From positions 62,001-126,000 of IMG/VR virus record IMGVR_UViG_3300020172_006270: a stretch of DNA of 64,000 nucleotides, one strand, 5' to 3'. The notes under the pieces were generated by a model. The model did not search any database, was not told where the DNA came from, and saw only the letters and a list, made by a program, of their open reading frames with translations. This document shows, piece by piece, positions 13,074 to 23,555 of this stretch; the stretch's first letter is position 1, and the number at the start of each line of letters is the position of its first letter. The translations under genes and the position numbers were made by a program.

Positions 13074-13075
13074 AG

Positions 13076-13159
13076 TGACCTCGGTGGGACTTGAACCCAC
13101 ACGTCCTTTCGGACACAAGTTCCTAAGACTTGAGCGTATGCCAATTTCGCCACGAGGCC
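13076..13159 (-). tRNA. tRNA-Leu(TAG), long variable arm
   Basis: cloverleaf, CAAGT-CTTAGGA-ACTTG, GGTTCAAGTCC, A73. Confidence 0.95.
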
Positions 13160-13203
13160 GTTATTTTGCGCATGAGTTCGCCAAATTTTCGTGTTCGCCA
13201 TAC

Positions 13204-13232
13204 ATTTTACCACGTTTTCGGCATCTTGTAAA
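13204..13232 (-). promoter_or_regulatory. sigma70-type phage promoter
   Basis: TTTACA-17nt-TAAAAT with CGTGG. Confidence 0.7.
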
Positions 13233-13235
13233 ACG

Positions 13236-13317
13236 TAGCCCTGGCGGGACTCGAACCCGCAATCCTTTCGGCGACAGATTTTAAGTCTGTTGTGTATACC
13301 AATTCCACCACAGGGCC
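13236..13317 (-). tRNA. tRNA-Leu(TAA), long variable arm
   Basis: ACAGA-CTTAAAA-TCTGT, GGTTCGAGTCC. Confidence 0.95.
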
Positions 13318-13319
13318 GC

Positions 13320-13508
13320 TCATTCGTCTTTATCGTCTTTGTGACAGTCGCAATGACAACCTTTGTGTTTGTTCTTGTATTCTATGTACTTCCTGTATCT
13401 GATTTTATTGTACCAGTTGGTGCCGGTCATTGTTCCTAAAATGGCAAGGATTGCTGTCACCAGGATATAACCAATTTCTAAAAAGCCACCACAAATACAA
13501 GCAATCAT
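13320..13508 (-). CDS. small membrane protein with a Cys/His tail
   Basis: RBS GAGGA, MIACICGG..., one TM helix. Confidence 0.6.
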   Translation of the reverse strand: MIACICGGFLEIGYILVTAILAILGTMTGTNWYNKIRYRKYIEYKNKHKGCHCDCHKDDKDE

Positions 13509-13533
13509 TTCACTGTTCTTTCCTCGGAGTATC

Positions 13534-13577
13534 AAAAAAATGAGCATATCACCTAAGCCTTCTTCGGTGATATGCTC
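13534..13577 (-). terminator. intrinsic terminator downstream of the rRNA-like RNA
   Basis: GAGCAUAUCACC...GGUGAUAUGCUC followed by AUUUUUUU. Confidence 0.85.
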
Positions 13578-13604
13578 CCAGGCACCAGCAATGCAATGCC
13601 GGTG

Positions 13605-13794
13605 TCGAGTGTCAGGTTGGCTCGGCCAGTGTGCTATTACGCCAAAAGGGATCGCAAACAAGGAAGGCCCAAGTTTTCTCCCTACTCTTTGAATGGACCG
13701 GATTGCTCCGGCGCTGTGGCTGCTTCTAAGCCAACATCCTGGCTGTCTTTGTTTCCCCGAAAGGCAGGTCGTACCTTACCTCTAAATCACTCGA
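13605..13794 (-). ncRNA. structured RNA containing a 23S rRNA H42-H44 (GTPase-associated centre) mimic
   Basis: AGACAGCCAGGAUGUUGGCUUAGAAGCAGCCA [20-nt insert] CCAUUCAAAGAGU [41-nt insert] GCGUAAUAGCACACUGGCCGAG, closed by UCGAGUG/CACUCGA. Confidence 0.88.
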
Positions 13795-13840
13795 TCTACC
13801 GTAGTCATTGTATTCACAATGCTTCCTACAGCGGTTTGGC

Positions 13841-14275
13841 TCACTTATCCAACTTGGCAGGCACAGTGCCTTCCTTATTGGACTTGTCGGCAGCGATCTT
13901 TGGCTCAGGAACGAGCCATCGGGTCATTGCCGTAGTCTTAGTATAGCCAAATTGCTGAATGGCAGCGTGATACCCGTCTGCATAATTGTTTTCAGCACCG
14001 CAGAGCTTCAGTGCGTCATCCCAGCCGTCTTGATACGCACCGGGGGTTTGTGGGCCACCGATGCGAATCAGGGCGGCTTTATATCCCTGATCGTAGGTGG
14101 GCTTGCCAGCAAGCTCGGAGATTTCATCCTTGAGAATACGATGCTCGGCATCGTAGATGGAGTTCACCAGCGAGAGTCGCTGATTCTCCTTCTGAATATT
14201 CCAGGTGTGCCACGTCATTGCGCCAATGCACAATGCAGAAATCCCGGCAATGGTCCATCCAGTTTTCGTACTCAT
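13841..14275 (-). CDS. hypothetical membrane-anchored protein
   Basis: N-terminal TM helix; YDQGY/YQDGW/YADGY repeats. Confidence 0.7.
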   Translation of the reverse strand: MSTKTGWTIAGISALCIGAMTWHTWNIQKENQRLSLVNSIYDAEHRILKDEISELAGKPTYDQGYKAALIRIGGPQTPGAYQDGWDDALKLCGAENNYADGYHAAIQQFGYTKTTAMTRWLVPEPKIAADKSNKEGTVPAKLDK

Positions 14276-14356
14276 TTGCAATCTTCCTTCGGGTCTTGGT
14301 TTGGAAATCAACACAAAGTCGGAGTATACAGTCATGGAAGATAAAATCAAGCCGAG

Positions 14357-14773
14357 TTAGCTTGTCTTTTTGTCGCCATCACCACGTTGACGGGCGGCGA
14401 CGTAGAAGACGTAAGAAGTCTTGCTCTGACCCATAGCCATCTTGCTGGGAGATTCGGTTTGTCGGTAGGTAACTGCAAGTTTGGTTGTCGGAGTCTCGTA
14501 GGCCAGCAGTTCTTTCATCCTGGCTAGAATTGATGCAATAAACTGAGGACTGCCTGTGAGTCGCATTCCGTCTTCGCCATATGTGGAACCCTTGTGGGTA
14601 TAGTCAATGGCTTGCATCTGAACGGGCGTATCGGGACGTAAGTTCTTCCAGTAAGCCACAATTTCGTCTTTTGTGGCTTTCCATTTGGTCGATTGCTGAG
14701 AAGGGGCCGCTTGAGGCTGTTGTGCCTGCGGCTGCATTTCTTGCGATCCCATGAATTCCTTGAACGTCATCAT
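14357..14773 (-). CDS. hypothetical protein, possible internal head protein
   Basis: MMTFKEFM..E N-terminus; TATATA-N4-ATG upstream. Confidence 0.75.
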   Translation of the reverse strand: MMTFKEFMGSQEMQPQAQQPQAAPSQQSTKWKATKDEIVAYWKNLRPDTPVQMQAIDYTHKGSTYGEDGMRLTGSPQFIASILARMKELLAYETPTTKLAVTYRQTESPSKMAMGQSKTSYVFYVAARQRGDGDKKTS

Positions 14774-14776
14774 ACC

Positions 14777-15001
14777 TTATATACCGACTTTTGATCTGAT
14801 CTTGTCGCTGTGCTTGTGGACTTTTTTGTGATCCACGCCACCTTTGCGGTATGCCTTGTTCTTTTCTTCGGAATTCTGGTCGCTACAAGCCCCAATTACC
14901 TGATAATCACTGGTATCCGTGCAGTTTCCGATATACGGACCACTGCCCATTTCCCGGAGTTTGGCTTCTCTTGTCTGCATCCAGTCTTTGAATTTAATCA
15001 T
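14777..15001 (-). CDS. hypothetical protein, possible internal head protein
   Basis: MIKFKDWM..E N-terminus; TATATA-N4-ATG upstream. Confidence 0.7.
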   Translation of the reverse strand: MIKFKDWMQTREAKLREMGSGPYIGNCTDTSDYQVIGACSDQNSEEKNKAYRKGGVDHKKVHKHSDKIRSKVGI

Positions 15002-15004
15002 GCC

Positions 15005-15724
15005 TTATATATCACTGGACAAATCTAATGCAATTCCCCACTCTCGGTTTTTATTGGCAACGTAATTTCTAGTAGTTTTCGCCTTATCCAATATTTCAGC
15101 GTTGATCCGCTGGGTTTCTTTGATGTTTTTGTTGCGAAAATTCCTTGCTCGTTCTTTTTCGTTGTGGTCAATTGCTCGGCAAAAACGGAGCGGCGTCTCT
15201 GCGTATTTCAATTTGTTGTGCATTGCTGCACGAAATTCAAAGTCTATATCATCCCAGCCCCAGCCTACGTTCATATCTTCGTTGTAGCCATTGACGCTAT
15301 AGAAGTGTTCTCGACGGACGGCGATTTTCCCACAACTGCCAGACATATTGAACATATCAAATACGGGAGCAGTCATGATGCGATCTTTATTCTGCATGAC
15401 TTCTTGGATCAACTGAACAAAGCCGTCGATCAAGAAATTGTCGGCGTCTAAATTGCAAAGAATATCGCCGGTCGCTTGGCGATGAGCAATGTTTTTGGCG
15501 TGAGATGCCTGAAAGTGTTCGGGAAGCTGAGTTCGATAGTATTTGACGGTTCCACGCTCGATCCAGGGCCGGATATTGTCACGGACCCATTCGTGCATTC
15601 CGTCTTTGCTGCCATAATTAAGCAGCACAAACTCGCAATCTGGTGCGACATGAAGGTTTATGGGCAGGGTTCTCATTAGATGATGAACCCTGCCCATGCA
15701 AGTTGTGCAAAATGATATTTTCAA
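15005..15724 (-). CDS. GT-A glycosyltransferase (GT2/GT7-like)
   Basis: NLDAD, VNGYNEDM..GWGWDD. Confidence 0.88.
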   Translation of the reverse strand: MKISFCTTCMGRVHHLMRTLPINLHVAPDCEFVLLNYGSKDGMHEWVRDNIRPWIERGTVKYYRTQLPEHFQASHAKNIAHRQATGDILCNLDADNFLIDGFVQLIQEVMQNKDRIMTAPVFDMFNMSGSCGKIAVRREHFYSVNGYNEDMNVGWGWDDIDFEFRAAMHNKLKYAETPLRFCRAIDHNEKERARNFRNKNIKETQRINAEILDKAKTTRNYVANKNREWGIALDLSSDI

Positions 15725-15725
15725 A

Positions 15726-16376
15726 TTAGCCCTTCAAGAACAAGGCCATGAATCCTCTTGATAGTGGCGAATCATAATATCCAGTACACCGAGGATGTTT
15801 GGCCAAAGCGAAAATCTTTTCTCTATATTCGCTTTGAGTTTGTGGGCTTGTCCAATCAGGAGCGGAGTCAGACCGATATGGCGAAGTATCGTGAAATACT
15901 GCAAGTTTACGCAGCGTTCCTTTGTTGAGCATAATCTCGCATTCGAGGGGTCTGATCTCAGTCAGACTATCGAAGAATCCAATATCGAATACCATATTGG
16001 ATTGTTGTAAGAATTCAAGAGAATCAACGCAATGTACTTCAGCCCATTTAAGCAAGTGTTCTTCTTCAAGAACGGTTTGCAATCGAACGCATTGGGGTGG
16101 CAGAACTTCGAGAGAATGAACCTTGCCGAAGCCATTGAGTTTGCACGCATGAGCCAGAGCAGTTGTACCGAAGCCTTCCCAGGCACCAGTTTCCAAAACC
16201 AAGTCGGGCTTCAATACTCGAATGGTTGAGTGCAGCCAATTGAGGACTTCATATTCTGTTGAGCCGCCATCGGCTACTTCAAATAAGTCTGCACGTTCCG
16301 CTGCGATGTGTGGGTGAACATCGCATTCTCTAAGAATGGGACTCCAAGCTGGTTTCCAAGTATAATCTCGTTCCAC
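15726..16376 (-). CDS. class I SAM-dependent methyltransferase
   Basis: VLETGAWEG, GFFDS, VFHDT; paralogue of the next gene. Confidence 0.85.
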   Translation of the reverse strand: MERDYTWKPAWSPILRECDVHPHIAAERADLFEVADGGSTEYEVLNWLHSTIRVLKPDLVLETGAWEGFGTTALAHACKLNGFGKVHSLEVLPPQCVRLQTVLEEEHLLKWAEVHCVDSLEFLQQSNMVFDIGFFDSLTEIRPLECEIMLNKGTLRKLAVFHDTSPYRSDSAPDWTSPQTQSEYREKIFALAKHPRCTGYYDSPLSRGFMALFLKG

Positions 16377-16377
16377 T

Positions 16378-17019
16378 TCAACCCCTTAAAAACAAAGCAA
16401 TAAATCCTCTGGATAAAGTCCACTCAAAGTAGCCAGTGCAAAGAGGATTTTTTGCCATGTCGAATATTTTGTTTCTGAATGTGTCTTGTTCTTCTTTGGT
16501 AGTATACACTGTGGTTCGAGTTGCGGCTGTGTCGTGAAACACTGCTATTTTTTTGATTATTCCACGACGCATACAAATCATGCCTTCGTCGGCTTTGATT
16601 TCAATCAAAGTATCGAAGAACCCAATATCAAATATTAGATCGGTTTCTTCTAAAAACTTCATTGAATCGCATTCGTGAACCTCAGCCCATTCACTTAACC
16701 CCTCGTCAGCAAGTCGTTGTCGAACTTGTGCGCAAGTCTCCGGGTTATGTTCAAGAGAGTGAACTTTGCCAAATCCATTTAGCTTGCAGGCGTGAGCCAA
16801 AGCAATTGTCCCCATGCCCTCCCAGGCACCAGTTTCCAAAACCACTTCAGGTTTCATGACCCTAACGGTTGCATGGAGCCAATTCAGAACTTCAAATTCG
16901 GTAGAGCTAGGATCAGCAACATCGAACAAATGTGCTTTTTCACAGGCATCATGCAGATGAATATCAGCTTCGATTTGCAATGGAGTCCATGCAGGCTTCC
17001 AAGTGTAGTCTTTTTCCAT
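16378..17019 (-). CDS. class I SAM-dependent methyltransferase
   Basis: VLETGAWEG, GFFDT, VFHDT; tandem duplicate. Confidence 0.85.
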   Translation of the reverse strand: MEKDYTWKPAWTPLQIEADIHLHDACEKAHLFDVADPSSTEFEVLNWLHATVRVMKPEVVLETGAWEGMGTIALAHACKLNGFGKVHSLEHNPETCAQVRQRLADEGLSEWAEVHECDSMKFLEETDLIFDIGFFDTLIEIKADEGMICMRRGIIKKIAVFHDTAATRTTVYTTKEEQDTFRNKIFDMAKNPLCTGYFEWTLSRGFIALFLRG

Positions 17020-17298
17020 TTAACCGCCTAAAGATATTACCGATGCTGTGACTTCTTCGCCCGCTTCTTTTTGCTTTTGGCATTCTTTGAAAACACAAAT
17101 CATGCACAAAGCCGGGACGTGAGGGTTATTGACTTTCATTGTGGTTTGGCGAGGTCCAATCCAACATCCAACTCCACAATTCTCACAGGGAATCCTACCT
17201 GAACCTGCATGTGGAACATATGGCACATCTTCCATTCCAAGTCGATCTTTGGCTTCGATTGGAATAAGTGCCAATACATTCATTCTTTGCTCGTCCAC
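17020..17298 (-). CDS. hypothetical Zn-binding protein
   Basis: CENC...CMIC. Confidence 0.65.
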   Translation of the reverse strand: MDEQRMNVLALIPIEAKDRLGMEDVPYVPHAGSGRIPCENCGVGCWIGPRQTTMKVNNPHVPALCMICVFKECQKQKEAGEEVTASVISLGG

Positions 17299-17316
17299 GA
17301 TTATTTCCTTCTTGGA

Positions 17317-17550
17317 TTATATATCGCCCCGGCGAATGATCCCGGATTTCATCAGCGATGGAACGTCATTGGGATTAAGACCATGTAATTCTTTGTAGTG
17401 CCTTTGCACCAAGTATCTTTCAACACCAATGCTGAAAGGCATCCATTCACCAAGTTCAGCGGACAGTTTGGTGATTTCCGCTTCTTTGTTTTTGTCCCGA
17501 TAGTGCAGGGGAAGGCCACAAGCACAGCGTTTGACTTGATTTCTACTCAT
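17317..17550 (-). CDS. hypothetical protein
   Basis: MSRNQVKRCACGLPLHY. Confidence 0.6.
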   Translation of the reverse strand: MSRNQVKRCACGLPLHYRDKNKEAEITKLSAELGEWMPFSIGVERYLVQRHYKELHGLNPNDVPSLMKSGIIRRGDI

Positions 17551-17914
17551 CGAACTGCCCTTTTGGAATTGGTCCATATTGTCTTGCCATGCACGCTCTG
17601 AGGTATCGTCTTGTAAGACGTTCAAGGCTTGGCAAATACATGGTGATGAAAGCCTGTCGCAGTTCGCTGATTTCTTTTTTGCCGGGGTTGAAGCCTTTGG
17701 GTCGAAGGTATCCTGATATGCTCACGCCTGTTGGCCGGTGTATCAGAAATACCGCTCGCAACTTTTTGTGTTTTTCGTTTTTGTCTGACCGGACGCAGAC
17801 TTCTCCTGGTCGTATTTTGAATTTTCCAAAAGAATAATCCGACACGCATCTTTGAAGCACGCTGTTGTCAATGTGCATTGATTCTCGAACTTGCGTGGCG
17901 TTAGGTTTTCGCAT
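17543..17914 (-). CDS. hypothetical protein
   Basis: overlap-coupled ORF; AVFLIHRPTGVSI weakly recalls the RF-1 domain but has no GGQ. Confidence 0.55.
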   Translation of the reverse strand: MRKPNATQVRESMHIDNSVLQRCVSDYSFGKFKIRPGEVCVRSDKNEKHKKLRAVFLIHRPTGVSISGYLRPKGFNPGKKEISELRQAFITMYLPSLERLTRRYLRACMARQYGPIPKGQFDE

Positions 17915-18086
17915 TGGCTTTTTGTTTCCAACAGACTGCGTGGTAAATGGCAGGCAATCCATCTATCGCTATGATTTCTGGATCGAGGACATATTTGCGG
18001 TTGATCTTGAGTGCATGGCCGCACTTACGACATTGCCGATTCTTATGCTTGCAATTTTTCGTGACTTTGTATTCGGGTCGCATCAT
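17901..18086 (-). CDS. hypothetical Cys-rich small protein
   Basis: CRKCG...YHAVC. Confidence 0.55.
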   Translation of the reverse strand: MMRPEYKVTKNCKHKNRQCRKCGHALKINRKYVLDPEIIAIDGLPAIYHAVCWKQKANAKT

Positions 18087-18361
18087 CGTTCCTCGATGTC
18101 GGTTCCCCAAAAACCAAATCGGAACCAGAAGGTCTTGCCGTCTTCGACTTGGACTTTATAGATGCGACAATTTTTGCTATGCCAGAACGGTCCAATATCG
18201 AAATGGTGTCGATCTATGCTGGAAACAACATGCTTGTTCGTCGCAGCCCAGGTATTTATTTCCTTTCGGTCGCTGGATTCCTGCGCAGGCAGAATTATGA
18301 GTGCCAATAGCAAAAACACAACAACGACGACAGCCAAAATCTTCTTTTCCATGATCTCCAT
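18083..18361 (-). CDS. hypothetical membrane-anchored protein
   Basis: N-terminal hydrophobic helix. Confidence 0.65.
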   Translation of the reverse strand: MEIMEKKILAVVVVVFLLLALIILPAQESSDRKEINTWAATNKHVVSSIDRHHFDIGPFWHSKNCRIYKVQVEDGKTFWFRFGFWGTDIEER

Positions 18362-18371
18362 CCATAAACGA

Positions 18372-18400
18372 CAAAAGCGTGGTGATTATACCACGCTTTT
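18372..18400 (-). terminator. terminator after tuf, overlapping a CGTGGTATAAT -10 element
   Basis: AAAAGCGTGGT-GATTAT-ACCACGCTTTT inverted repeat. Confidence 0.65.
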
Positions 18401-18408
18401 GCGTTTCT

Positions 18409-19581
18409 TTACAGCAGTTCCGTCACGACGCCTGAGCCAATCGTCATACCGCCCTCTCGGATAGCGAAATGACTGCCTTTTTCAATGGCAATCGGCTTAT
18501 CCAGGGTGATAAACAGGCAAGTGTTCTCGCCCGGCATAACCAATTCGATTCCTTCCGGCATTTCAACAAGGCCGGTGACGTTAGTGGTTCGGAAGAAGAA
18601 CTGCGGCTTATAACCGTTGAAGATCGGGGTGTGACGCCCGCCCTCATCCTTGCCCAAGACGTAAATTTCACTCTTGAACTTGGTGTGAGGTTTGATACTT
18701 CGTGGTTGTGCCACAACCTGTCCACGCTCCACCTGATCGGCTTTGATGCCTCTCAGCAGCAACCCGACGTTCTGACCAGCTTCGCCAAATTCCAATTGCT
18801 TGTTGAAGGCTTCGACGCTGGTGACAACCGATTCCAGAATGTCTCCCAGGCCCAAGATTTCAACTTTGGTTCCGACCGTGACGGTTCCTTGCTCGATCTT
18901 GCCCGTGACTACACAGCCACGACCTTCGATGTTGTGAACGCCCTCGATAGGCATCAAGAAAGGACGGTCAATAGAACGGCTGGGGTCAGGGATATAAGAA
19001 TCCAGAGCCGCCATCAGTTCTACGATGCACTTGCTTGCTGCGGGATCGGCAGGGTTATCCAGAGCGGGCTTTGCGGCCCCACGGATAAAGGGAGTCTTCT
19101 CACCATCGAAGCCATACTTCGTCAGCAAGTCTCTCGTTTCCATCTCGACCAGTTCGAGCAATTCCTTATCCTGAACCAGATCACACTTATTGAGGAACAC
19201 GACAATATCCGGCACGCCCACCTGACGAGCGAGCAGAATATGCTCTTTCGTCTGAGGCATAGGACCGTCTGCTGCATTGACGAGCAATACAGCGCCGTCC
19301 ATTTGAGCGGCCCCGGTAATCATGTTCTTCACATAGTCGGCGTGACCAGGGCAGTCGATGTGAGCATAGTGACGGGTATCCGTCTCATACTCAACGTGCG
19401 ACGTGGTGATCGTTACCGTTTTGGTAACGTCACGAACGGTGCCGCCCTTGGCGATGTCGCCGTATGCTTTCTTTTTTGCGAAACCCTTTTCGGCCTGAAC
19501 AGCGAGAATAGCTGCGGTCAGGGTCGTCTTCCCGTGGTCAATGTGACCAATCGTTCCGACATTGATGTGGACTTTCTTCAC
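18409..19581 (-). CDS. tuf: elongation factor Tu
   Basis: [54 protein letters not shown]; GTG start after AGGAG. Confidence 0.98.
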
Positions 19582-19705
19582 TTTACTTTCTCCTGTGATC
19601 TTTACGATAGATCACTGTTGGAGGTTTTGATCTCTATATCCCCACTACAGAATAGTGTTTCTACTCACAACGAGTAAGAGCCAAGGCATCCAGAAATCGA
19701 AACAG

Positions 19706-19789
19706 TGCCGCTCCCCGGACTTGAACCGGGACGCCGGTAAAGGCATCAGATTTTGAGTCTGACGTGTCTGCCAATTCCACCAGAGCGGC
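19706..19789 (-). tRNA. tRNA-Leu(CAA), long variable arm
   Basis: TCAGA-CTCAAAA-TCTGA. Confidence 0.95.
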
Positions 19790-19802
19790 ATAAACAAAAC
19801 AG

Positions 19803-19877
19803 TGACGGGTGTGGGACTCGAACCCACAAAACCATGATTTTAAGTCACGGATGTCTGCCTAGTTGCATCAACCCGCC
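19803..19877 (-). tRNA. tRNA-Leu(TAA), short variable loop
   Basis: CGTGA-CTTAAAA-TCATG, variable region GTTTT. Confidence 0.88.
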
Positions 19878-19883
19878 ATACAG

Positions 19884-19960
19884 TGCCAGCGGTGGGACTC
19901 GAACCCACAAAACCCCGGCTCTCGACCGGAGATGTCTACCATAGGTTGCATCACGCTGGC
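19884..19960 (-). tRNA. tRNA-Leu(GAG), short variable loop, C33
   Basis: TCCGG-TCGAGAG-CCGGG, variable region GTTTT. Confidence 0.82.
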
Positions 19961-19992
19961 ATATAGTGCCGGATCGCTCCAGCACTAATCTC

Positions 19993-20295
19993 TTAATCCT
20001 CACCACGCAACTCTTTGAGTTGTTCGTTGTAGTCCACGTCAGACTTCAATTCGTGATTGTGCTTTGACCGCTTTGGATACTTGTCGCTATGACAGATGCC
20101 GCACTGCGGATTGCCACAATCGAAAGCGTCTTTCTTACGGAATCGACCCTTCTGTTCATCACATTCACAGTCAACAACATATGCGCTGACGCCAATGCGA
20201 TTTCTTGTCCAGGTTTTGTTGCTCTCAACGTGAGAGCGCCGGTGTTTCTTCCACTCACGCAGAGTGATCTTGTAATCCTCGTGCCACCGCTTCAT
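19993..20295 (-). CDS. small basic Cys-containing hypothetical protein
   Basis: RBS GGAGG; CGNPQCGICH. Confidence 0.75.
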   Translation of the reverse strand: MKRWHEDYKITLREWKKHRRSHVESNKTWTRNRIGVSAYVVDCECDEQKGRFRKKDAFDCGNPQCGICHSDKYPKRSKHNHELKSDVDYNEQLKELRGED

Positions 20296-20376
20296 CGTTC
20301 CCTCCATAATGGGTTTGGGTAATAGGCTCGATGAAGCCGATGATTTGCGTGTGGTGAGTGTTCATGTTTATTCTCT

Positions 20377-20829
20377 CTAGTTAAGGAAGCAACAGTCCGG
20401 GTTGGGACACCAATCTCCGAACTCTTCGGATTGGGTGTCAGAAATCAATCGTGTGTAACAGCAACGGCAATGTCCTTTGACCCACCATGCTGGGCCGAAC
20501 CATCGAAAGCCGCCACGAGTTGTTTCGTAGTAGCATCCAATTCGTTCTAGCCAATCCATAATAGTGTGGGCGATCATTCGCCGTTCAGCATCACGCCATG
20601 AGTAAGGAAATTCATGCCACTCATAGCCATGACCACTTTCTCGGTATTGATGATCTCGACCGAGATACTTCCATGATTTTTGCTTGCGAACAAACTGATC
20701 GTCCCATGCCGTGGGAAGGTTTCGTCTCTTCCCACGGACATAGGGATCATTGCGGTCTTGGTTCGCTCTTATTTCTTGTGTTGTTCTCGGATACCGAAGG
20801 CACGTCGAGAACCATCTTTTCTTTGCCAT
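20377..20829 (-). CDS. basic hypothetical protein
   Basis: RBS AGGAG; RYPRTTQE..RGKRRNLPTAWDD; C-terminal Cys cluster. Confidence 0.75.
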   Translation of the reverse strand: MAKKRWFSTCLRYPRTTQEIRANQDRNDPYVRGKRRNLPTAWDDQFVRKQKSWKYLGRDHQYRESGHGYEWHEFPYSWRDAERRMIAHTIMDWLERIGCYYETTRGGFRWFGPAWWVKGHCRCCYTRLISDTQSEEFGDWCPNPDCCFLN

Positions 20830-20858
20830 GTAGCGTTTCTCCTAAGTGCGGAATGCAC

Positions 20859-20894
20859 TTAAAAGACGCTACCCAGCCTTTCGTGAATTTTCAT
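20859..20894 (-). CDS. putative 11-aa leader peptide MKIHERLGSVF
   Basis: AGGA RBS; stop codon lies in a hairpin that sequesters the RBS of the 20829 gene. Confidence 0.5.
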   Translation of the reverse strand: MKIHERLGSVF

Positions 20895-21028
20895 ACGAGT
20901 CCTTTTACTTTGTTCTTTCAAATATGTGGACTGTCGAATCCTTGACAGTTTTACTTACCGATCATAGGCGATCCTATCGCTACCGGGGTCAGCCTCATGT
21001 TCATCCTGAACATCAGCGTCCACTTCCA

Positions 21029-21541
21029 TCAACCCGTCCAAATTTCTTCTTTTCCAGTCGGCGGGTCATTCAATCTCTTCAAAAATTTACCTGTATATTT
21101 ATGGTCTTCGGGGTTCAAACCCTTCCGCAAATACCGCACATCTGGTGTTACTTCTCGTTCCGAATACTGATATTCAATGCCCAGCCGAGTGTGTTTGATG
21201 ATTTTCTTTTCTTTATCCACCCATTCGTATTCACGAGCCTGATCGACAACTACAGTGCCTTTCATGCCTTCGATGTCGATGTCATATTCGTGCATGTTCT
21301 GGATTTCAATTTCGTCTTCTTCAACCAACGCCCAACAAGGATAGCTGTACCGTTTAGGCGGTGGGTTTTCATGGATCGGTCCACCCATCAACATTCGTCG
21401 CAAGAGAGCCGAGTGGCCAACATCAGCCGAACTTGAACCTCGTTTATTGTCTTCGCAGATATTCATCCACTGGCAAACCATCTTGCAAGCGAACTCACAC
21501 TGCTCACGAGTCAACGATGTAACTTTTTCTTCGTCCATCAT
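21029..21541 (-). CDS. hypothetical protein
   Basis: RBS GGAG; lies between tRNA blocks. Confidence 0.75.
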   Translation of the reverse strand: MMDEEKVTSLTREQCEFACKMVCQWMNICEDNKRGSSSADVGHSALLRRMLMGGPIHENPPPKRYSYPCWALVEEDEIEIQNMHEYDIDIEGMKGTVVVDQAREYEWVDKEKKIIKHTRLGIEYQYSEREVTPDVRYLRKGLNPEDHKYTGKFLKRLNDPPTGKEEIWTG

Positions 21542-21555
21542 ATTCTCCAACAAAG

Positions 21556-21632
21556 TACCCAGGACGGGACTCGAACCCGTAAAACCGATATTTTGAGTAT
21601 CGGATGTCTACCGAAGGTTGCATCACCTGGGC
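21556..21632 (-). tRNA. tRNA-Leu(CAA), short variable loop
   Basis: CGATA-CTCAAAA-TATCG, variable region GTTTT. Confidence 0.88.
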
Positions 21633-21669
21633 ATATTCTACCAAATCTCGTCTTGGCTGTACAGCCAAG

Positions 21670-21757
21670 TGGACAGCGACGGAATCGAACCGCTCCGGCA
21701 CCCACCCTACTTTTTTAATGCCAACGGATTTACAGTCCGCCGTAAGGAACGCTATCC
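21670..21757 (-). tRNA. tRNA-Tyr(GTA)-like, no D-arm, enlarged variable arm
   Basis: acceptor GGATAGC/GCTGTCC-A, GCGGA-CTGTAAA-TCCGT, GGTTCGATTCC. Confidence 0.78.
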
Positions 21758-21814
21758 ATGTTTTCCTAAAAACAGGTGTTTTCCCACATAGGAAAACATG
21801 CGTTTTTAGGAAAG

Positions 21815-21888
21815 TCGCTCCGGTGGGACTCGAACCCACAGCATCCCTGGTTCTAAGCCAAGGTGGTCTGCCAATTGCCTACAGAGCG
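21815..21888 (-). tRNA. tRNA-Leu(TAG), short variable loop
   Basis: CTTGG-CTTAGAA-CCAGG, variable region GATGC. Confidence 0.88.
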
Positions 21889-21894
21889 TTCAAG

Positions 21895-21966
21895 TGGACT
21901 GTGAGGCGCTCGAATCCTCGTCTCAGCGTTTTCAGCGCTGCGCTACACCATCTCAGCTAACAGTCC
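21895..21966 (-). tRNA. tRNA-Phe(GAA), atypical T-arm
   Basis: CAGCG-CTGAAAA-CGCTG. Confidence 0.82.
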
Positions 21967-21974
21967 ATATACAG

Positions 21975-22058
21975 TGTCCGAGGGGAGAGTCGAACTCCCA
22001 CGCCTTTTACGGCACAAGGCCCTCAACCTTGCGTGTCTACCAATTTCACCACTCGGAC
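21975..22058 (-). tRNA. tRNA-Leu(GAG), long variable arm
   Basis: CAAGG-TTGAGGG-CCTTG. Confidence 0.95.
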
Positions 22059-22070
22059 AAAACAAATCAG

Positions 22071-22145
22071 TGGGCTGTCTCAGAGTCGAACTGAGTTCTC
22101 ATGTTCTTCAGACATGCGCTGAATGACCGCACTAGCTCACAGCCC
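22071..22145 (-). tRNA. tRNA-Phe(GAA)
   Basis: CATGT-CTGAAGA-ACATG. Confidence 0.88.
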
Positions 22146-22154
22146 AATATTCAA

Positions 22155-22334
22155 TTATTCTTTTGTTGCTTCTTCAAGTTCCCTGATGCAATCTCGCAAT
22201 GATATTGTTCGTCCATGCTGGACGCCCATTGCAGTCAATGGGTTCATATCTTTTGCGACATTAGGATTCTCTTGAAATCGCTTCAATCGTTCTTTCCATT
22301 TTTGAATCAATTCTTGTATATTTGTTTCTTGCAT
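22155..22334 (-). CDS. hypothetical small protein
   Basis: RBS AAGGA, MQETNIQELI. Confidence 0.65.
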   Translation of the reverse strand: MQETNIQELIQKWKERLKRFQENPNVAKDMNPLTAMGVQHGRTISLRDCIRELEEATKE

Positions 22335-22350
22335 ATTTAATCCTTCCAAG

Positions 22351-22434
22351 TCTCCGGGGGGAGAGTCGAACTCCCACGCCTTTTACGGCACAAGATTCTG
22401 AGTCTTGCGTGTCTACCAATTCCACCACCCGGAG
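22351..22434 (-). tRNA. tRNA-Leu(CAG), long variable arm
   Basis: CAAGA-CTCAGAA-TCTTG. Confidence 0.95.
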
Positions 22435-22441
22435 ATAAAAG

Positions 22442-22530
22442 CGGAAGTCAAGGGAATTGAACCCTTACCGGATATTTCACCGGGCCTGTTTTCAAGACAG
22501 GTGCAACAAACCAATATTTGCCTAACTTCC
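22442..22530 (-). tRNA. tRNA-Ser(TGA)
   Basis: CCTGT-CTTGAAA-ACAGG, long arm, G73. Confidence 0.92.
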
Positions 22531-22555
22531 ATATTGTGTCAACAACTTTGACATA

Positions 22556-22627
22556 GAGGATACACCGGCTTCGACACCGGATATGTCCCGTTTCTAGCAG
22601 GATGAGTTACATTTCTCCATGTACTCC
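22556..22627 (-). tRNA. degenerate tRNA-like element, anticodon AGA (Ser)
   Basis: GGAGTACA/TGTATCC bulged acceptor, GAG/CTC D-stem, TCCTG-CTAGAAA-CGGGA, aberrant T-loop. Confidence 0.5.
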
Positions 22628-22646
22628 ATATCGCATTTGACACAAG

Positions 22647-22733
22647 CGGAAGCCAAGGGAATTGAACCCTCACCGGGATTAACCGGGCCTGTTTTCGAGA
22701 CAGGTGCAACAAACCAGTATTTGCCTAGCTTCC
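22647..22733 (-). tRNA. tRNA-Ser(CGA)
   Basis: CCTGT-CTCGAAA-ACAGG. Confidence 0.92.
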
Positions 22734-22746
22734 ATAAAACAACAAG

Positions 22747-22836
22747 CGGAGGACAAGGGAATCGAACCCTCACCGGGTATTTCACCGGATCGGTTTAGCA
22801 AACCGACGTAGCAACACCACCATCTACCTATCCTCC
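22747..22836 (-). tRNA. tRNA-Ser(GCT)
   Basis: TCGGT-TTGCTAA-ACCGA. Confidence 0.92.
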
Positions 22837-22842
22837 ATTCAG

Positions 22843-22931
22843 CGGAAGCCAAGGGAATTGAACCCTCACCGGATATTTCACCGGACCCGCTTTCCAGGCG
22901 AGCGCAACAAACCAGTATTTGCCTAGCTTCC
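22843..22931 (-). tRNA. tRNA-Ser(GGA)
   Basis: CTCGC-CTGGAAA-GCGGG. Confidence 0.92.
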
Positions 22932-22987
22932 GTGTAATGCACTATACTTTGAACATTAACCAGGGCTAATGTTCATTCTATCGTACA

Positions 22988-23287
22988 TTATGCTTCAACC
23001 TTCACCAACTTGCCAAAGATACAGTTCCGGCCAACCCAGCCATTGATATGGCCTTTGTTGTTGCCGATCTGGAATCGGTCGCCTTGTATTGCTTTGATTA
23101 AGTGCAGGTATTGTTTGCCTGCAACTTTGCACAATACAATGTCGCCCGTATCCAAAACGCCAGTCACCGGCTCGACAGTGCATAACTGTCCTGATTCGAT
23201 CTTCCCGACCATTGAGTTGCCTCGTGGTCGAAACGAAACCGTCTCACCTGTTTGGAGTTTCGCTATGTAACCAGTCGCCCATCCCAT
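22988..23287 (-). CDS. S24/S26 peptidase-like protein
   Basis: RPRGNSM, GDIVLC, YLHLIK. Confidence 0.75.
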   Translation of the reverse strand: MGWATGYIAKLQTGETVSFRPRGNSMVGKIESGQLCTVEPVTGVLDTGDIVLCKVAGKQYLHLIKAIQGDRFQIGNNKGHINGWVGRNCIFGKLVKVEA

Positions 23288-23301
23288 AGTAATTCTCCAA
23301 G

Positions 23302-23385
23302 TGCATCCGGCAGGAATCGAACCTGCATGTCCCGAAGGAGGCTGGGTTACAGCCAGCTAGACCCACCACACTGTCTAACGGATGC
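23302..23385 (-). tRNA. tRNA-Tyr(GTA)
   Basis: GCTGG-CTGTAAC-CCAGC, long arm, atypical D-arm. Confidence 0.9.
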
Positions 23386-23395
23386 GTATGCCAAT

Positions 23396-23448
23396 AAAAA
23401 AACCCCCGGCAACTTTTTCCATCTTCTGGAGAAAGCTGCCGGGGGTTT
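23396..23448 (-). terminator. attenuator terminator directly upstream of the tRNA array
   Basis: CCCCCGGCAGC...GUUGCCGGGGG followed by U7. Confidence 0.9.
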
Positions 23449-23471
23449 GTATTTCCCCACAATTGTCCCGT

Positions 23472-23555
23472 TTAAGTCAGGACGCAGCCTTCCCCGTCGC
23501 TAAACAAATATAGCGATGAGTAAGAGAGCGACAGACTGAGGGATAAAGTGTTCAC
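23472..23555 (-). CDS. leader peptide MNTLSLSLSLSYSSLYLFSDGEGCVLT
   Basis: GGAG-N8-GTG; codons 4-19 are all Leu/Ser/Tyr/Phe; overlaps the protector and antiterminator segments. Confidence 0.85.
   Translation of the reverse strand: MNTLSLSLSLSYSSLYLFSDGEGCVLT

What the first reader, a model, noticed from the sequence alone, without database searches (positions are those of the whole stretch)
20255..20894. Two genes inside the array have uORFs and hairpins hiding their translation starts
Seen: the uORF MKIHERLGSVF (20894-20859) stops within the hairpin GUAGCGU-CUUUUAAGUGC/GCACUUAGGAG-AAACGCUAC, which buries the AGGAG of the 20829 gene. A second uORF (20365-20255) crosses GCUUCAUCG/CGAUGAAGC, which buries the AUG of the 20295 gene. 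Inference: a second, translational layer of ribosome-sensing control over two small basic Cys-containing proteins that may act on ribosomes or tRNA.
Basis: partly seen in the sequence, partly recalled or inferred. Interest (0 to 1): 0.6.

Follow-up and report, generated by a model that had tools for sequence, protein, structure and literature searches.

The report
Leader ORFs unmask hidden phage start sites
Two small uncharacterised genes in the tRNA and EF-Tu island of a huge freshwater phage have their ribosome-binding sites folded into hairpins that a ribosome translating a short upstream reading frame must open; the layout is conserved across many related phages, so it is a real though classical kind of translational switch.

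Summary

**Gene A (20829-20377, minus strand).** An 11-codon uORF with its own Shine-Dalgarno (SD) sequence precedes it. The uORF stop codon lies directly after the anti-SD strand of a -24.5 kcal/mol hairpin, and the other strand of that hairpin is gene A's AGGAG. This is the most stable 5' region among 178 candidate gene starts in the 223-kb phage record. The same layout recurs in 16 of the 18 diverse homologous loci examined. All three stop codons are used. Three stand-alone relatives have unrelated stem sequences.

**Gene B (20295-19993).** Hairpin 2 is unremarkable on its own. However, an AUG-started ORF in the same relative frame crosses the start site in 38 of 42 distinct leaders, against about 7 expected. 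The start region pairs with upstream leader sequence more strongly than shuffled controls in 29 of 42. Where gene A precedes gene B, the uORF2 AUG lies within -8 to +11 nt of gene A's stop.

**Best reading.** This is a translational relay: uORF1, then A, then uORF2, then B, with ribosomes unmasking hidden start sites.

**Still open.** Whether the relay senses ribosome stalling is untested. Both proteins remain of unknown function. It is a new member of a known regulatory kind.

The parts
20900..20904 (-). Shine-Dalgarno-like AAGGA of uORF1, 5 nt before its AUG
   Evidence: Read from the sequence. An SD-like purine run lies 5-9 nt before the uORF AUG in most of the homologous leaders listed. 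It is weak or absent in L219 and L218.
20859..20894 (-). uORF1: 11 codons plus UAA, MKIHERLGSVF
   Evidence: Short uORFs of 8-14 codons ending in the same place are found in 16 of 18 gene A or module loci. UAA, UAG and UGA are all used.
20830..20872 (-). Hairpin 1. 5' arm 20872-20855 (contains anti-SD CUUUU 20865-20861 and the uORF1 stop), loop AUUCC 20854-20850, 3' arm 20849-20830 (contains gene A SD AGGAG 20843-20839)
   Evidence: -24.5 kcal/mol, z = -6.9. Rank 1 of 178 gene starts in the record. A covariance model finds it in 13 loci. 92% of cells are paired and 3 pairs show double changes. L012, L024 and L219 have the same layout with unrelated stems.
20377..20829 (-). Gene A: 150 aa, pI 9.1, 8 Cys. 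Conserved basic N-terminal module (aa 1-67), small beta-alpha-beta-beta domain (aa 68-115), Cys-rich tail
   Evidence: It hits phrog_12793 of unknown function. The N-terminal module has 1967 representative clusters at E <= 0.001.
20255..20365 (-). uORF2 (bridge ORF): 36 codons. Its AUG is 11 nt after gene A's stop; it reads across gene B's SD and AUG, and gene B is in its +1 frame
   Evidence: An equivalent ORF is present in 38 of 42 distinct leaders against 7.4 expected, and 5 of 42 in each other frame. Its AUG is within -8 to +11 nt of gene A's stop in 9 loci.
20289..20337 (-). Hairpin 2: GCUUCAUCG (20337-20329) pairs with CGAUGAAGC (20297-20289), which includes the gene B AUG. The SD GGAGG at 20305-20301 lies in the enclosed loop
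   Evidence: Weak alone. It is the RNAalifold consensus of the window's subclade, with 2 compensated pairs. Family-wide, pairing of the start region with upstream leader sequence exceeds shuffles (mean z = -2.6, Wilcoxon p = 8e-11).
19993..20295 (-). Gene B: 100 aa, pI 9.0, 5 Cys. Helix, then a Cys/His cluster (motif ending CHSDK[YF]PKR), then helix
   Evidence: At least 171 homologous clusters, all annotated as hypothetical, on contigs up to 673 kb.

Best explanation
The two genes form one translational relay in which ribosomes themselves unmask hidden start sites.

1. Gene A's SD is locked in hairpin 1.
2. uORF1 has its own exposed SD, and its AUG lies about 20 nt before the hairpin base, so it can be initiated freely.
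3. A ribosome on the last uORF1 codons and its stop covers the anti-SD strand. The SD, about 20 nt further on, then lies single-stranded just beyond the ribosome's front edge.
4. Gene A can be initiated either by a fresh 30S subunit or by the terminating ribosome, 24-28 nt downstream.
5. A ribosome finishing gene A restarts at the uORF2 AUG, which sits at gene A's stop codon and has only a weak SD in this phage.
6. uORF2 runs through the strand that pairs with gene B's start region, and so opens gene B.

Output of both proteins should therefore follow ribosome flux and dwell time on the leader, and should be near zero on untranslated RNA.

Shown: the sequences, the folds, the conservation and the spacing. 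Inferred: that translation of A and B depends on the uORFs.
For: - Hairpin 1 is exceptional by shuffles and within the genome.
- The layout uORF, anti-SD, stop, inner stem, loop, SD recurs in 16 of 18 loci. The stop ends at -26 to -31 from the gene A AUG (-25 for L012, read) despite indels. All three stop codons are used. Most of these uORFs carry their own SD.
- L012, L024 and L219 keep the layout with unrelated stem sequences.
- L027 has changes on both arms of the outer stem that keep pairing.
- uORF2 is present in 38 of 42 leaders against 7.4 expected, binomial p = 1e-24. 29 of 38 have an SD-like 4-mer.
- The gene B start region pairs with upstream leader sequence beyond shuffles in 29 of 42 leaders.
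- The uORF2 AUG lies within -8 to +11 nt of gene A's stop in 9 loci, with ATGA overlaps in L030 and L035. Where gene A is absent, uORF2 has a strong SD of its own, for example AGGAG or AAGGUGAU.
- A contig from a freshwater RNA library covers 20744-20894 with one mismatch.
Against: - There is no expression or reporter data. The RNA-library contig may be DNA carry-over.
- The covariation count for hairpin 1 among close relatives is modest: 3 pairs with double changes, and the inner stem is invariant.
- SD pairing probability for gene B is only slightly above shuffles, 0.72 against 0.64.
- Hairpin 2 in this window is not significant alone.
- uORF2 ends 41 nt inside gene B, so its ribosomes also run over gene B's start and could repress as well as activate.
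- One module homolog (L025) has no leader, and one (L218) has the uORF but no clear hairpin.
Confidence: 0.65

Rival explanations
1. Stall-sensing attenuator. The leader is not just a coupler but a sensor. Expression of A, and through the relay of B, rises only when ribosomes linger on the last uORF1 codons or its stop. Causes could be slow termination or recycling, shortage or damage of particular tRNAs, or a drug or ligand acting with the nascent peptide. This would resemble cat/cmlA/erm leaders or TnaC.
For: - The stop codon is always placed so that a paused terminating ribosome holds the anti-SD.
- The C-terminal peptide G-S-V-F is kept in 11 of 16 leaders through synonymous changes, and S-V-F in 12 when L215 (DSVF) is counted. 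Ser is encoded by AGC, AGU or UCU, and is Thr in one.
- The genes sit among Leu, Ser, Phe and Tyr tRNA genes, EF-Tu, aaRS and RNA ligase.
Against: - The V-F codons are the anti-SD itself, so RNA pairing explains much of the peptide conservation.
- Distant members end in MNIF, ANFR, EQFFP or GSPY.
- There is no enrichment of Leu, Ser, Phe or Tyr codons in the uORFs (my count from the peptides).
- There is no alternative anti-sequestering helix as in erm leaders.
- No stall was measured.
Confidence: 0.2
2. Autogenous operator. Hairpin 1 is a binding site for a protein, perhaps protein A itself with its basic and probably RNA-binding N-terminus. Binding would clamp the stem and shut off translation, like MS2 coat protein on the replicase operator or ribosomal-protein feedback. 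This could coexist with the relay.
For: - The inner stem GUGC/GCAC is invariant in 11 distinct leaders.
- The loop stays AAUUYC-like (AUUCC, AAUUCC, AAUUUC, AAUUAC) even in L024, whose stem sequence is unrelated.
- Protein A's most conserved 67 residues are basic and are modelled as disordered on their own.
Against:
- The loops differ in L027 (AAUAAC), L012 and L219.
- Sequence invariance among relatives may simply reflect shared descent.
Confidence: 0.15
3. RNA stability or processing element. The hairpins protect or mark the mRNA pieces that are released when neighbouring tRNAs are cut out of the array transcript. The uORFs would be incidental.
For: The genes lie between tRNA clusters and are probably co-transcribed with them. 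A stable 5' stem can protect mRNA (established knowledge).
Against: - The 3' arm is always the SD and the 5' arm always ends a uORF with its own SD. A mere stability stem need not keep either.
- The same leader occurs at loci without adjacent tRNAs.
- There is no U tract, so it is not an intrinsic terminator.
Confidence: 0.07
4. Programmed +1 frameshift that fuses uORF2 to gene B.
For: Gene B is always in the +1 frame of uORF2, and a GGAGG lies just upstream of the junction.
Against: - There is no conserved slippery or hungry codon. The codons between the SD and the AUG vary freely.
- The spacing does not match the prfB arrangement.
- The N-terminus MKRWHE with an SD at 5 nt is a normal start.
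- The gene B frame is closed just upstream in several loci.
Confidence: 0.03

Closest known systems
cat-86 / cmlA type translation attenuation (short leader ORF plus a single RBS-sequestering hairpin)
   Same: A leader of about 8-14 codons has its own SD. A single hairpin has the regulated gene's SD in its 3' arm and the leader's 3' end in its 5' arm. A ribosome on the leader's last codons opens it.
   Different: No inducer or arrest motif is known here. The leader stop is fixed immediately after the anti-SD. The element belongs to a phage gene family of unknown function rather than a resistance gene. This comparison rests on my own knowledge of those systems.
Translational coupling through RBS unmasking (MS2 coat to replicase; rpmI to rplT in the IF3-L35-L20 operon)
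   Same: The downstream start region is base-paired to a sequence inside the upstream reading frame. It therefore opens only when that frame is translated.
   Different: Here the upstream frames are dedicated mini-ORFs rather than real genes. Two such steps are chained.
mok/hok overlapping leader ORF of type I toxin-antitoxin loci (reviewed in PMC4147584)
   Same: An upstream ORF overlaps the main start in another frame, and its translation is thought to be needed to translate the main ORF.
   Different: No antisense RNA was found or sought. Gene B is a soluble, basic, probably zinc-binding 100-aa protein, not a small membrane toxin.
Translation-gene islands of huge phages (Al-Shayeb et al. 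2020, PMC7162821)
   Same: The window is part of a 223-kb fragment of a huge freshwater phage with tRNAs and EF-Tu. Relatives carry aaRS genes and an RNA ligase next to gene A.
   Different: In the passages I searched, that paper catalogues the genes and says nothing of leader ORFs or hidden start sites.

Membership tests
Leader-peptide translation attenuation (cat/cmlA/erm kind) | Short leader ORF with its own ribosome-binding site upstream of the regulated gene | tested here: met
   uORF1 has 11 codons, with AAGGA 5 nt upstream. It is conserved in 16 of 18 loci.
Leader-peptide translation attenuation (cat/cmlA/erm kind) | SD of the regulated gene is sequestered in a stem whose other strand lies in the leader ORF | tested here: met
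   AGGAG pairs with CUUUU, which lies within codons 10-11 and the stop of uORF1.
Leader-peptide translation attenuation (cat/cmlA/erm kind) | Regulated ribosome stalling in the leader (inducer or arrest peptide) | not testable with these tools
   Sequence evidence only. The G-S-V-F ending is common but overlaps the anti-SD and is absent in distant members.
erm-type four-segment attenuator | Alternative anti-sequestering helix (segments 2:3) | tested here: not met
   The minimum-free-energy and centroid folds show a single hairpin and no competing helix.
Translational coupling by termination-reinitiation | Upstream stop within a few nucleotides of the downstream start | tested here: met
   For gene A stop to uORF2 AUG the distance is -8 to +11 nt in 9 loci. 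For uORF1 to gene A the gap is 24-28 nt, so strict reinitiation is less certain there.
Translational coupling by RBS unmasking | Downstream start region pairs with a sequence inside the upstream ORF | tested here: met
   Hairpin 1. For gene B leaders, 29 of 42 beat shuffles at p <= 0.05, with mean z = -2.6.
Translational coupling by RBS unmasking | Downstream translation depends on upstream translation | not testable with these tools
   Needs reporter or cell-free assays.
mok/hok-type overlapping leader | Leader ORF overlaps the main start; main product is a small membrane toxin; an antisense RNA controls the leader | tested here: not met
   The overlap is met. Gene B is a basic 100-aa helix, Cys/His cluster, helix protein. 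Antisense RNA was not examined.
Nascent-peptide arrest leaders (SecM, MifM, TnaC) | Conserved arrest motif in the peptide, independent of RNA constraints | tested here: inconclusive
   G-S-V-F (11 of 16 leaders; S-V-F in 12) is kept with synonymous codons, but it coincides with the anti-SD. L061 and L062 change HYGG of uORF2 to FDSGG while keeping the pairing.
Known RNA families (Rfam 15) | Match to a curated cis-regulatory model | tested here: not met
   Only tRNA hits in 19600-23500 at E <= 1. Nothing over either leader.
Intrinsic terminator / transcription attenuator | GC-rich stem followed by a U tract | tested here: not met
   Hairpin 1 is followed by AUGGCAAAG. The terminator scan lists nothing there.
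prfB-like +1 programmed frameshift | Conserved shift-prone codon plus a slow codon at fixed spacing after an SD-like element | tested here: not met
   The codons between GGAGG and AUG vary freely among 42 leaders.

The most novel reading that the evidence does not exclude
The leader is a dedicated gauge of the state of the translation machinery in huge phages. A ribosome that lingers at the end of uORF1 would switch on protein A and, through the relay, protein B. Causes of lingering could be limiting release or recycling factors, damaged tRNAs, or host defence or phage takeover perturbing elongation. A and B would be phage factors that bind ribosomes or tRNA. The conserved AAUUYC loop would give feedback by binding protein A. 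This would be a phage-encoded sensor and effector circuit for translation stress, attached to a module family with about 2000 known clusters.
Probability: 0.15. Interest if true: 0.75.

Novelty: new member of a known kind. Interest (0 to 1): 0.5.

Why it matters
Huge phages carry tRNAs, EF-Tu, aaRS genes and other translation parts, but how they time or tune these islands is unknown.

This work identifies a deeply conserved leader that is easy to test. It ties two abundant, uncharacterised phage proteins to ribosome traffic.
- The N-terminal module of protein A has about 2000 representative clusters.
- Protein B has at least 171 clusters.

The practical gains are three:
- Corrected gene starts. 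For example, ATG 20295 rather than 20307 for gene B, and the start 30 nt upstream of the called one in L027.
- A compact natural ribosome-dependent switch.
- A handle for asking what these proteins do.

The principle itself is textbook, so the gain is a well-documented new instance and a concrete hypothesis, not a new mechanism.

Tried and rejected
- **Mis-registered model.** Model R1 was built with a structure string shifted by one column and should be ignored. R2 is the valid model.
- **Consensus folding of gene B leaders.** MAFFT plus RNAalifold on 18 heterogeneous leaders gave no consensus structure, because the 5' arms do not align. I replaced it with per-sequence duplex energies against shuffles.
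- **SD pairing probability.** For gene B this separates only weakly from shuffles, 0.72 against 0.64, because GGAGG finds pyrimidine partners easily.
- **14-mer scan.** A scan of viral contigs for the 5' arm returned 119 or more mostly chance matches and no new true leaders.
- **Other copies.** The covariance model finds no second copy of leader 1 in the 223-kb record.
- **Protein function.**
  - Pfam gives nothing for A or B.
  - PHROGs gives only an unknown-function family for A.
  - The ESM Atlas gives only hypothetical phage clusters.
  - Foldseek against PDB gives nothing for B and E > 1 for A.
  - VIA wide search for B has a best Z of 3.3.
  - Pfam on ten longer module-containing proteins gives no fused known domain.
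- **Reads.** Only assembled contigs were available, so transcript ends, strand and level could not be read.
- **Literature.** Three full-text searches found no description of these leaders or proteins.
- **Rejected readings.** Chance, terminator and frameshift readings were considered and rejected for the reasons given under rivals.
- **Not run.** No complex prediction was run, because I do not claim that A and B bind each other.

Full report
**Context**

The window is bases 62001-126000 of a 223-kb IMG/VR virus record that CheckV rates 46% complete. It encodes a tail sheath, ribonucleotide reductase and an SbcC-like nuclease. It is therefore a fragment of a huge phage. Sequencing runs that hold it are freshwater metagenomes.

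On the minus strand, a tRNA array runs from 23385 down to 13075. It is interrupted by protein genes, including an EF-Tu homolog at 19581-18409. The finding concerns two genes between tRNA clusters:
- Gene A, 20829-20377, 150 aa.
- Gene B, 20295-19993, 100 aa.

Huge phages are already known to carry tRNAs, aaRS genes and elongation factors (PMC7162821).

**Checking the observation**

- uORF1 (20894-20859) encodes MKIHERLGSVF and has AAGGA 5 nt upstream.
- Hairpin 1 spans 20872-20830.
- Its 5' arm contains CUUUU, which pairs with gene A's AGGAG, and then the uORF1 stop UAA. Its 3' arm ends one base before the gene A AUG.
- It folds at -24.5 kcal/mol, z = -6.9, and none of 200 shuffles folds as well.
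- Among 178 candidate gene starts with an SD in the whole record, it is the single most stable 5' region: -28.7 against -10.1 with sd 4.5.
- No U tract follows and no Rfam family matches.

uORF2 (20365-20255) and the pairing GCUUCAUCG / CGAUGAAGC over the gene B AUG are also present. This hairpin is ordinary by itself: z = -2.7, duplex p = 0.055, rank 33 of 178.

**Gene A leader in relatives**

Homologs of gene A were collected from viral contigs, metagenomes and assemblies. In 13 loci with 52-95% protein identity, the leader is found by a covariance model.

Each of these leaders has the same features:
- A uORF of 8-13 codons, in most with an SD-like run of its own.
- A pyrimidine anti-SD (CUUUU, UUUCU or CUUCU) as its last sense codons.
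- A stop codon immediately after the anti-SD, which may be UAA, UAG or UGA.
- An inner stem GUGC/GCAC.
- A 5-6 nt loop.
- The gene A SD in the 3' arm.

The stop survives a one-base deletion that changes UAA-GUGC to UAG-UGC. In L027 the outer stem changes on both arms and still pairs.

The pair count on the model alignment is 92% paired. Three pairs show double changes, and the covariation score is reached by 13 of 500 shuffles. That is modest, because most sequences are close.

The stronger evidence comes from three stand-alone versions of the N-terminal module of protein A. These are L024 (75 aa), L012 (72 aa) and L219 (57 aa), with about 40-50% identity or less. All three have a uORF of 9-14 codons whose stop follows an anti-SD in the 5' arm of a hairpin that holds the SD. 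Their stem sequences are entirely different: UCCGUUAGGU/ACCUAAUGGA, UUCUUUCC/GGAGAGAA and UCUCCU/AGGAGA.

One homolog (L025) has a plain SD. One (L218) has the uORF but no clear stem.

**Gene B leader in relatives**

A metagenome scan plus viral contigs gave 42 distinct leaders from homologs with at least 48% identity.
- In 38 of them an AUG-started ORF begins 64-130 nt upstream and reads across the gene B SD and AUG. It is always in the frame that puts gene B at +1.
- Dinucleotide shuffles predict 7.4 of 42, and each of the other two frames shows 5 of 42.
- 29 of the 38 have an SD-like 4-mer before the uORF AUG.
- The peptides are not alignable except where they overlap the SD and gene B's conserved N-terminus.
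- The frequent HYGG is CAY-UAY-GGA-GG. In L061 and L062 it becomes FDSGG, while the partner strand changes in step (CCGUAGUG to CCGCUAU). So pairing, not peptide, is what is kept.
- The region -24 to +6 pairs with upstream leader sequence more strongly than 200 shuffles at p <= 0.05 in 29 of 42 leaders. Mean z = -2.6 and Wilcoxon p = 8e-11.

The pairing register differs by subclade. In the window's subclade it is GCUUCAUC(G) with (C)GAUGAAGC, which is the RNAalifold consensus there with two compensated pairs.

More distant gene B homologs lack the uORF and are joined to the preceding gene by an ATGA overlap.

**The two elements are linked**

In all nine loci where a separate uORF2 lies between gene A and gene B, the uORF2 AUG lies within -8 to +11 nt of gene A's stop. 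Two of these are ATGA overlaps, and the SD is then weak.

Where gene A is absent, uORF2 has a strong SD of its own. In L214, gene B follows gene A by 9 nt with no separate uORF2.

This is the arrangement expected if the ribosome that finishes gene A restarts on uORF2, and uORF2 serves only to carry it through the strand that hides gene B's start.

**Mechanism proposed**

- Shown: sequence, fold, spacing and conservation.
- Inferred from established ribosome geometry (my own knowledge): a ribosome with the uORF1 stop in its A site covers about 12-15 nt downstream of the P site. That is the whole 5' arm and the loop. The anti-SD sits in the P and E sites, and AGGAG begins about 22 nt from the P-site codon, just outside the ribosome and without a partner.

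Gene A can then be initiated, and the relay continues to gene B. On untranslated RNA both starts stay closed.

I put 0.65 on this ribosome-dependent unmasking. Whether it is merely constitutive coupling or a regulated stall sensor cannot be decided here.
- The G-S-V-F ending of uORF1 is kept in 11 of 16 leaders through synonymous codons (S-V-F in 12, counting L215). This hints at peptide constraint.
- However, it coincides with the anti-SD and is lost in distant members.

The invariant inner stem and the AAUUYC-like loop persist in L024 despite its unrelated stem. This leaves room for a bound factor, possibly protein A itself.

**The proteins**

Protein A:
- pI 9.1, 8 Cys.
- It has a strongly conserved basic N-terminal module: R-Y-P-R-T-x-Q-E-x-R-A-N ... 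R-G-K-R-R-N-L-P-T-A-W-D-D ... W-K ... Q-Y-R. AlphaFold models this as disordered.
- After it come a small beta-alpha-beta-beta domain (pLDDT about 80) and an optional Cys-rich tail.
- A profile of the module finds 1967 representative clusters at E <= 0.001. Many are stand-alone proteins of 55-80 aa, and some carry the module at the C-terminus. The ten longer members scanned have no Pfam domain.

Protein B:
- pI 9.0, 5 Cys.
- It is modelled as a helix, a Cys/His cluster ending CHSDK[YF]PKR, and a second helix, with pLDDT 75.

Neither model matches a solved structure.

Neighbouring genes at relatives' loci include class I and class II aaRS genes, an RNA ligase, an AlkB-like oxygenase, EF-Tu and a methyltransferase. 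A role in translation or tRNA biology is therefore a reasonable guess, but it is untested.

**Expression**

Only assembled contigs were available.
- A freshwater metatranscriptome library holds a 189-nt contig matching 20744-20894 with one mismatch. It departs from the window exactly upstream of the uORF1 AUG.
- Other RNA-labelled runs hold relatives of genes A and B at about 90% identity.

This is compatible with transcription but does not prove it.

**Verdict**

The sensing part and the protein functions remain hypotheses.

The principle is classical, comparable to cat/cmlA leaders, MS2 and rpmI-rplT coupling, and mok/hok. I found no prior description of these leaders or proteins in the searchable literature. 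I class it as a new member of a known kind, of moderate interest.

Noticed in passing
window 13075-23385 (whole record G000): All 14 tRNA genes that ARAGORN finds in the 223-kb record lie in this window. They decode only Leu (7), Ser (4), Phe (2) and Tyr (1). That is the three long-variable-arm tRNA types of bacteria plus Phe. The other half of the genome is not available.
   Followed up: partly
window 19884-19960 (-): An extra tRNA-like gene that ARAGORN does not call. It scores 35.5 bits on the Rfam tRNA model, above the gathering score of 29. Its anticodon loop reads UCGAGAG, with C rather than U before the anticodon.
   Followed up: no
window 19802-19877 (-), 21814-21888 (-), 22070-22145 (-): Two tRNAs of 75-76 nt have Leu anticodons (UAA, UAG) but no long variable arm, which is unusual for bacterial-type tRNA-Leu. 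There is also a second tRNA-Phe with its anticodon at position 37.
   Followed up: no
window 21670-21758 (-): A weak tRNA-Sec-like match of 31.4 bits, below the gathering score of 47, just upstream of the 174-aa gene.
   Followed up: no
window 20629-20829 (-), and proteins P0161-P0305: The 67-aa N-terminal module of protein A is a large uncharacterised family with 1967 representative clusters. It is often a stand-alone basic protein of 55-80 aa, and is sometimes C-terminal, as in phrog_12793.
   Followed up: partly
L016, L053, L055, L057-L060, L063-L065, L067, L069 (about -110 to -10 from gene B): A second type of gene B leader occurs in other phages. It is a long hairpin whose stem sequence differs between loci while staying paired (for example CCCAUCGCAG/CUGCGGUGGG against CCCUGCGGGG/CCUCGCAGGG). 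It coincides with a 56-76-aa Cys-rich uORF (RSPSQCRPCMVAAVG-like).
   Followed up: partly
window 32053 (+) and G000:C1:198457 (+): Two further gene starts in the record combine a paired SD (probability above 0.9), a stable 5' region and a short uORF ending 15-40 nt upstream.
   Followed up: no
window 20930-20949 (-): A small hairpin, ACUGUC-AAGGAUUC-GACAGU, lies between the upstream 174-aa gene and uORF1. It is deleted in L002 and L003.
   Followed up: no
L027 2471-2839: The gene caller's start for the gene A homolog P0152 is 30 nt too far downstream. The conserved start, right after the hairpin, gives MSKKKWYMPLMRSPRT.
   Followed up: yes
window 18409-19581 (-): A phage-encoded EF-Tu homolog of 390 aa with a GTG start lies directly downstream of the tRNAs that follow gene B. 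EF-Tu is also downstream of gene A and gene B in several relatives.
   Followed up: partly
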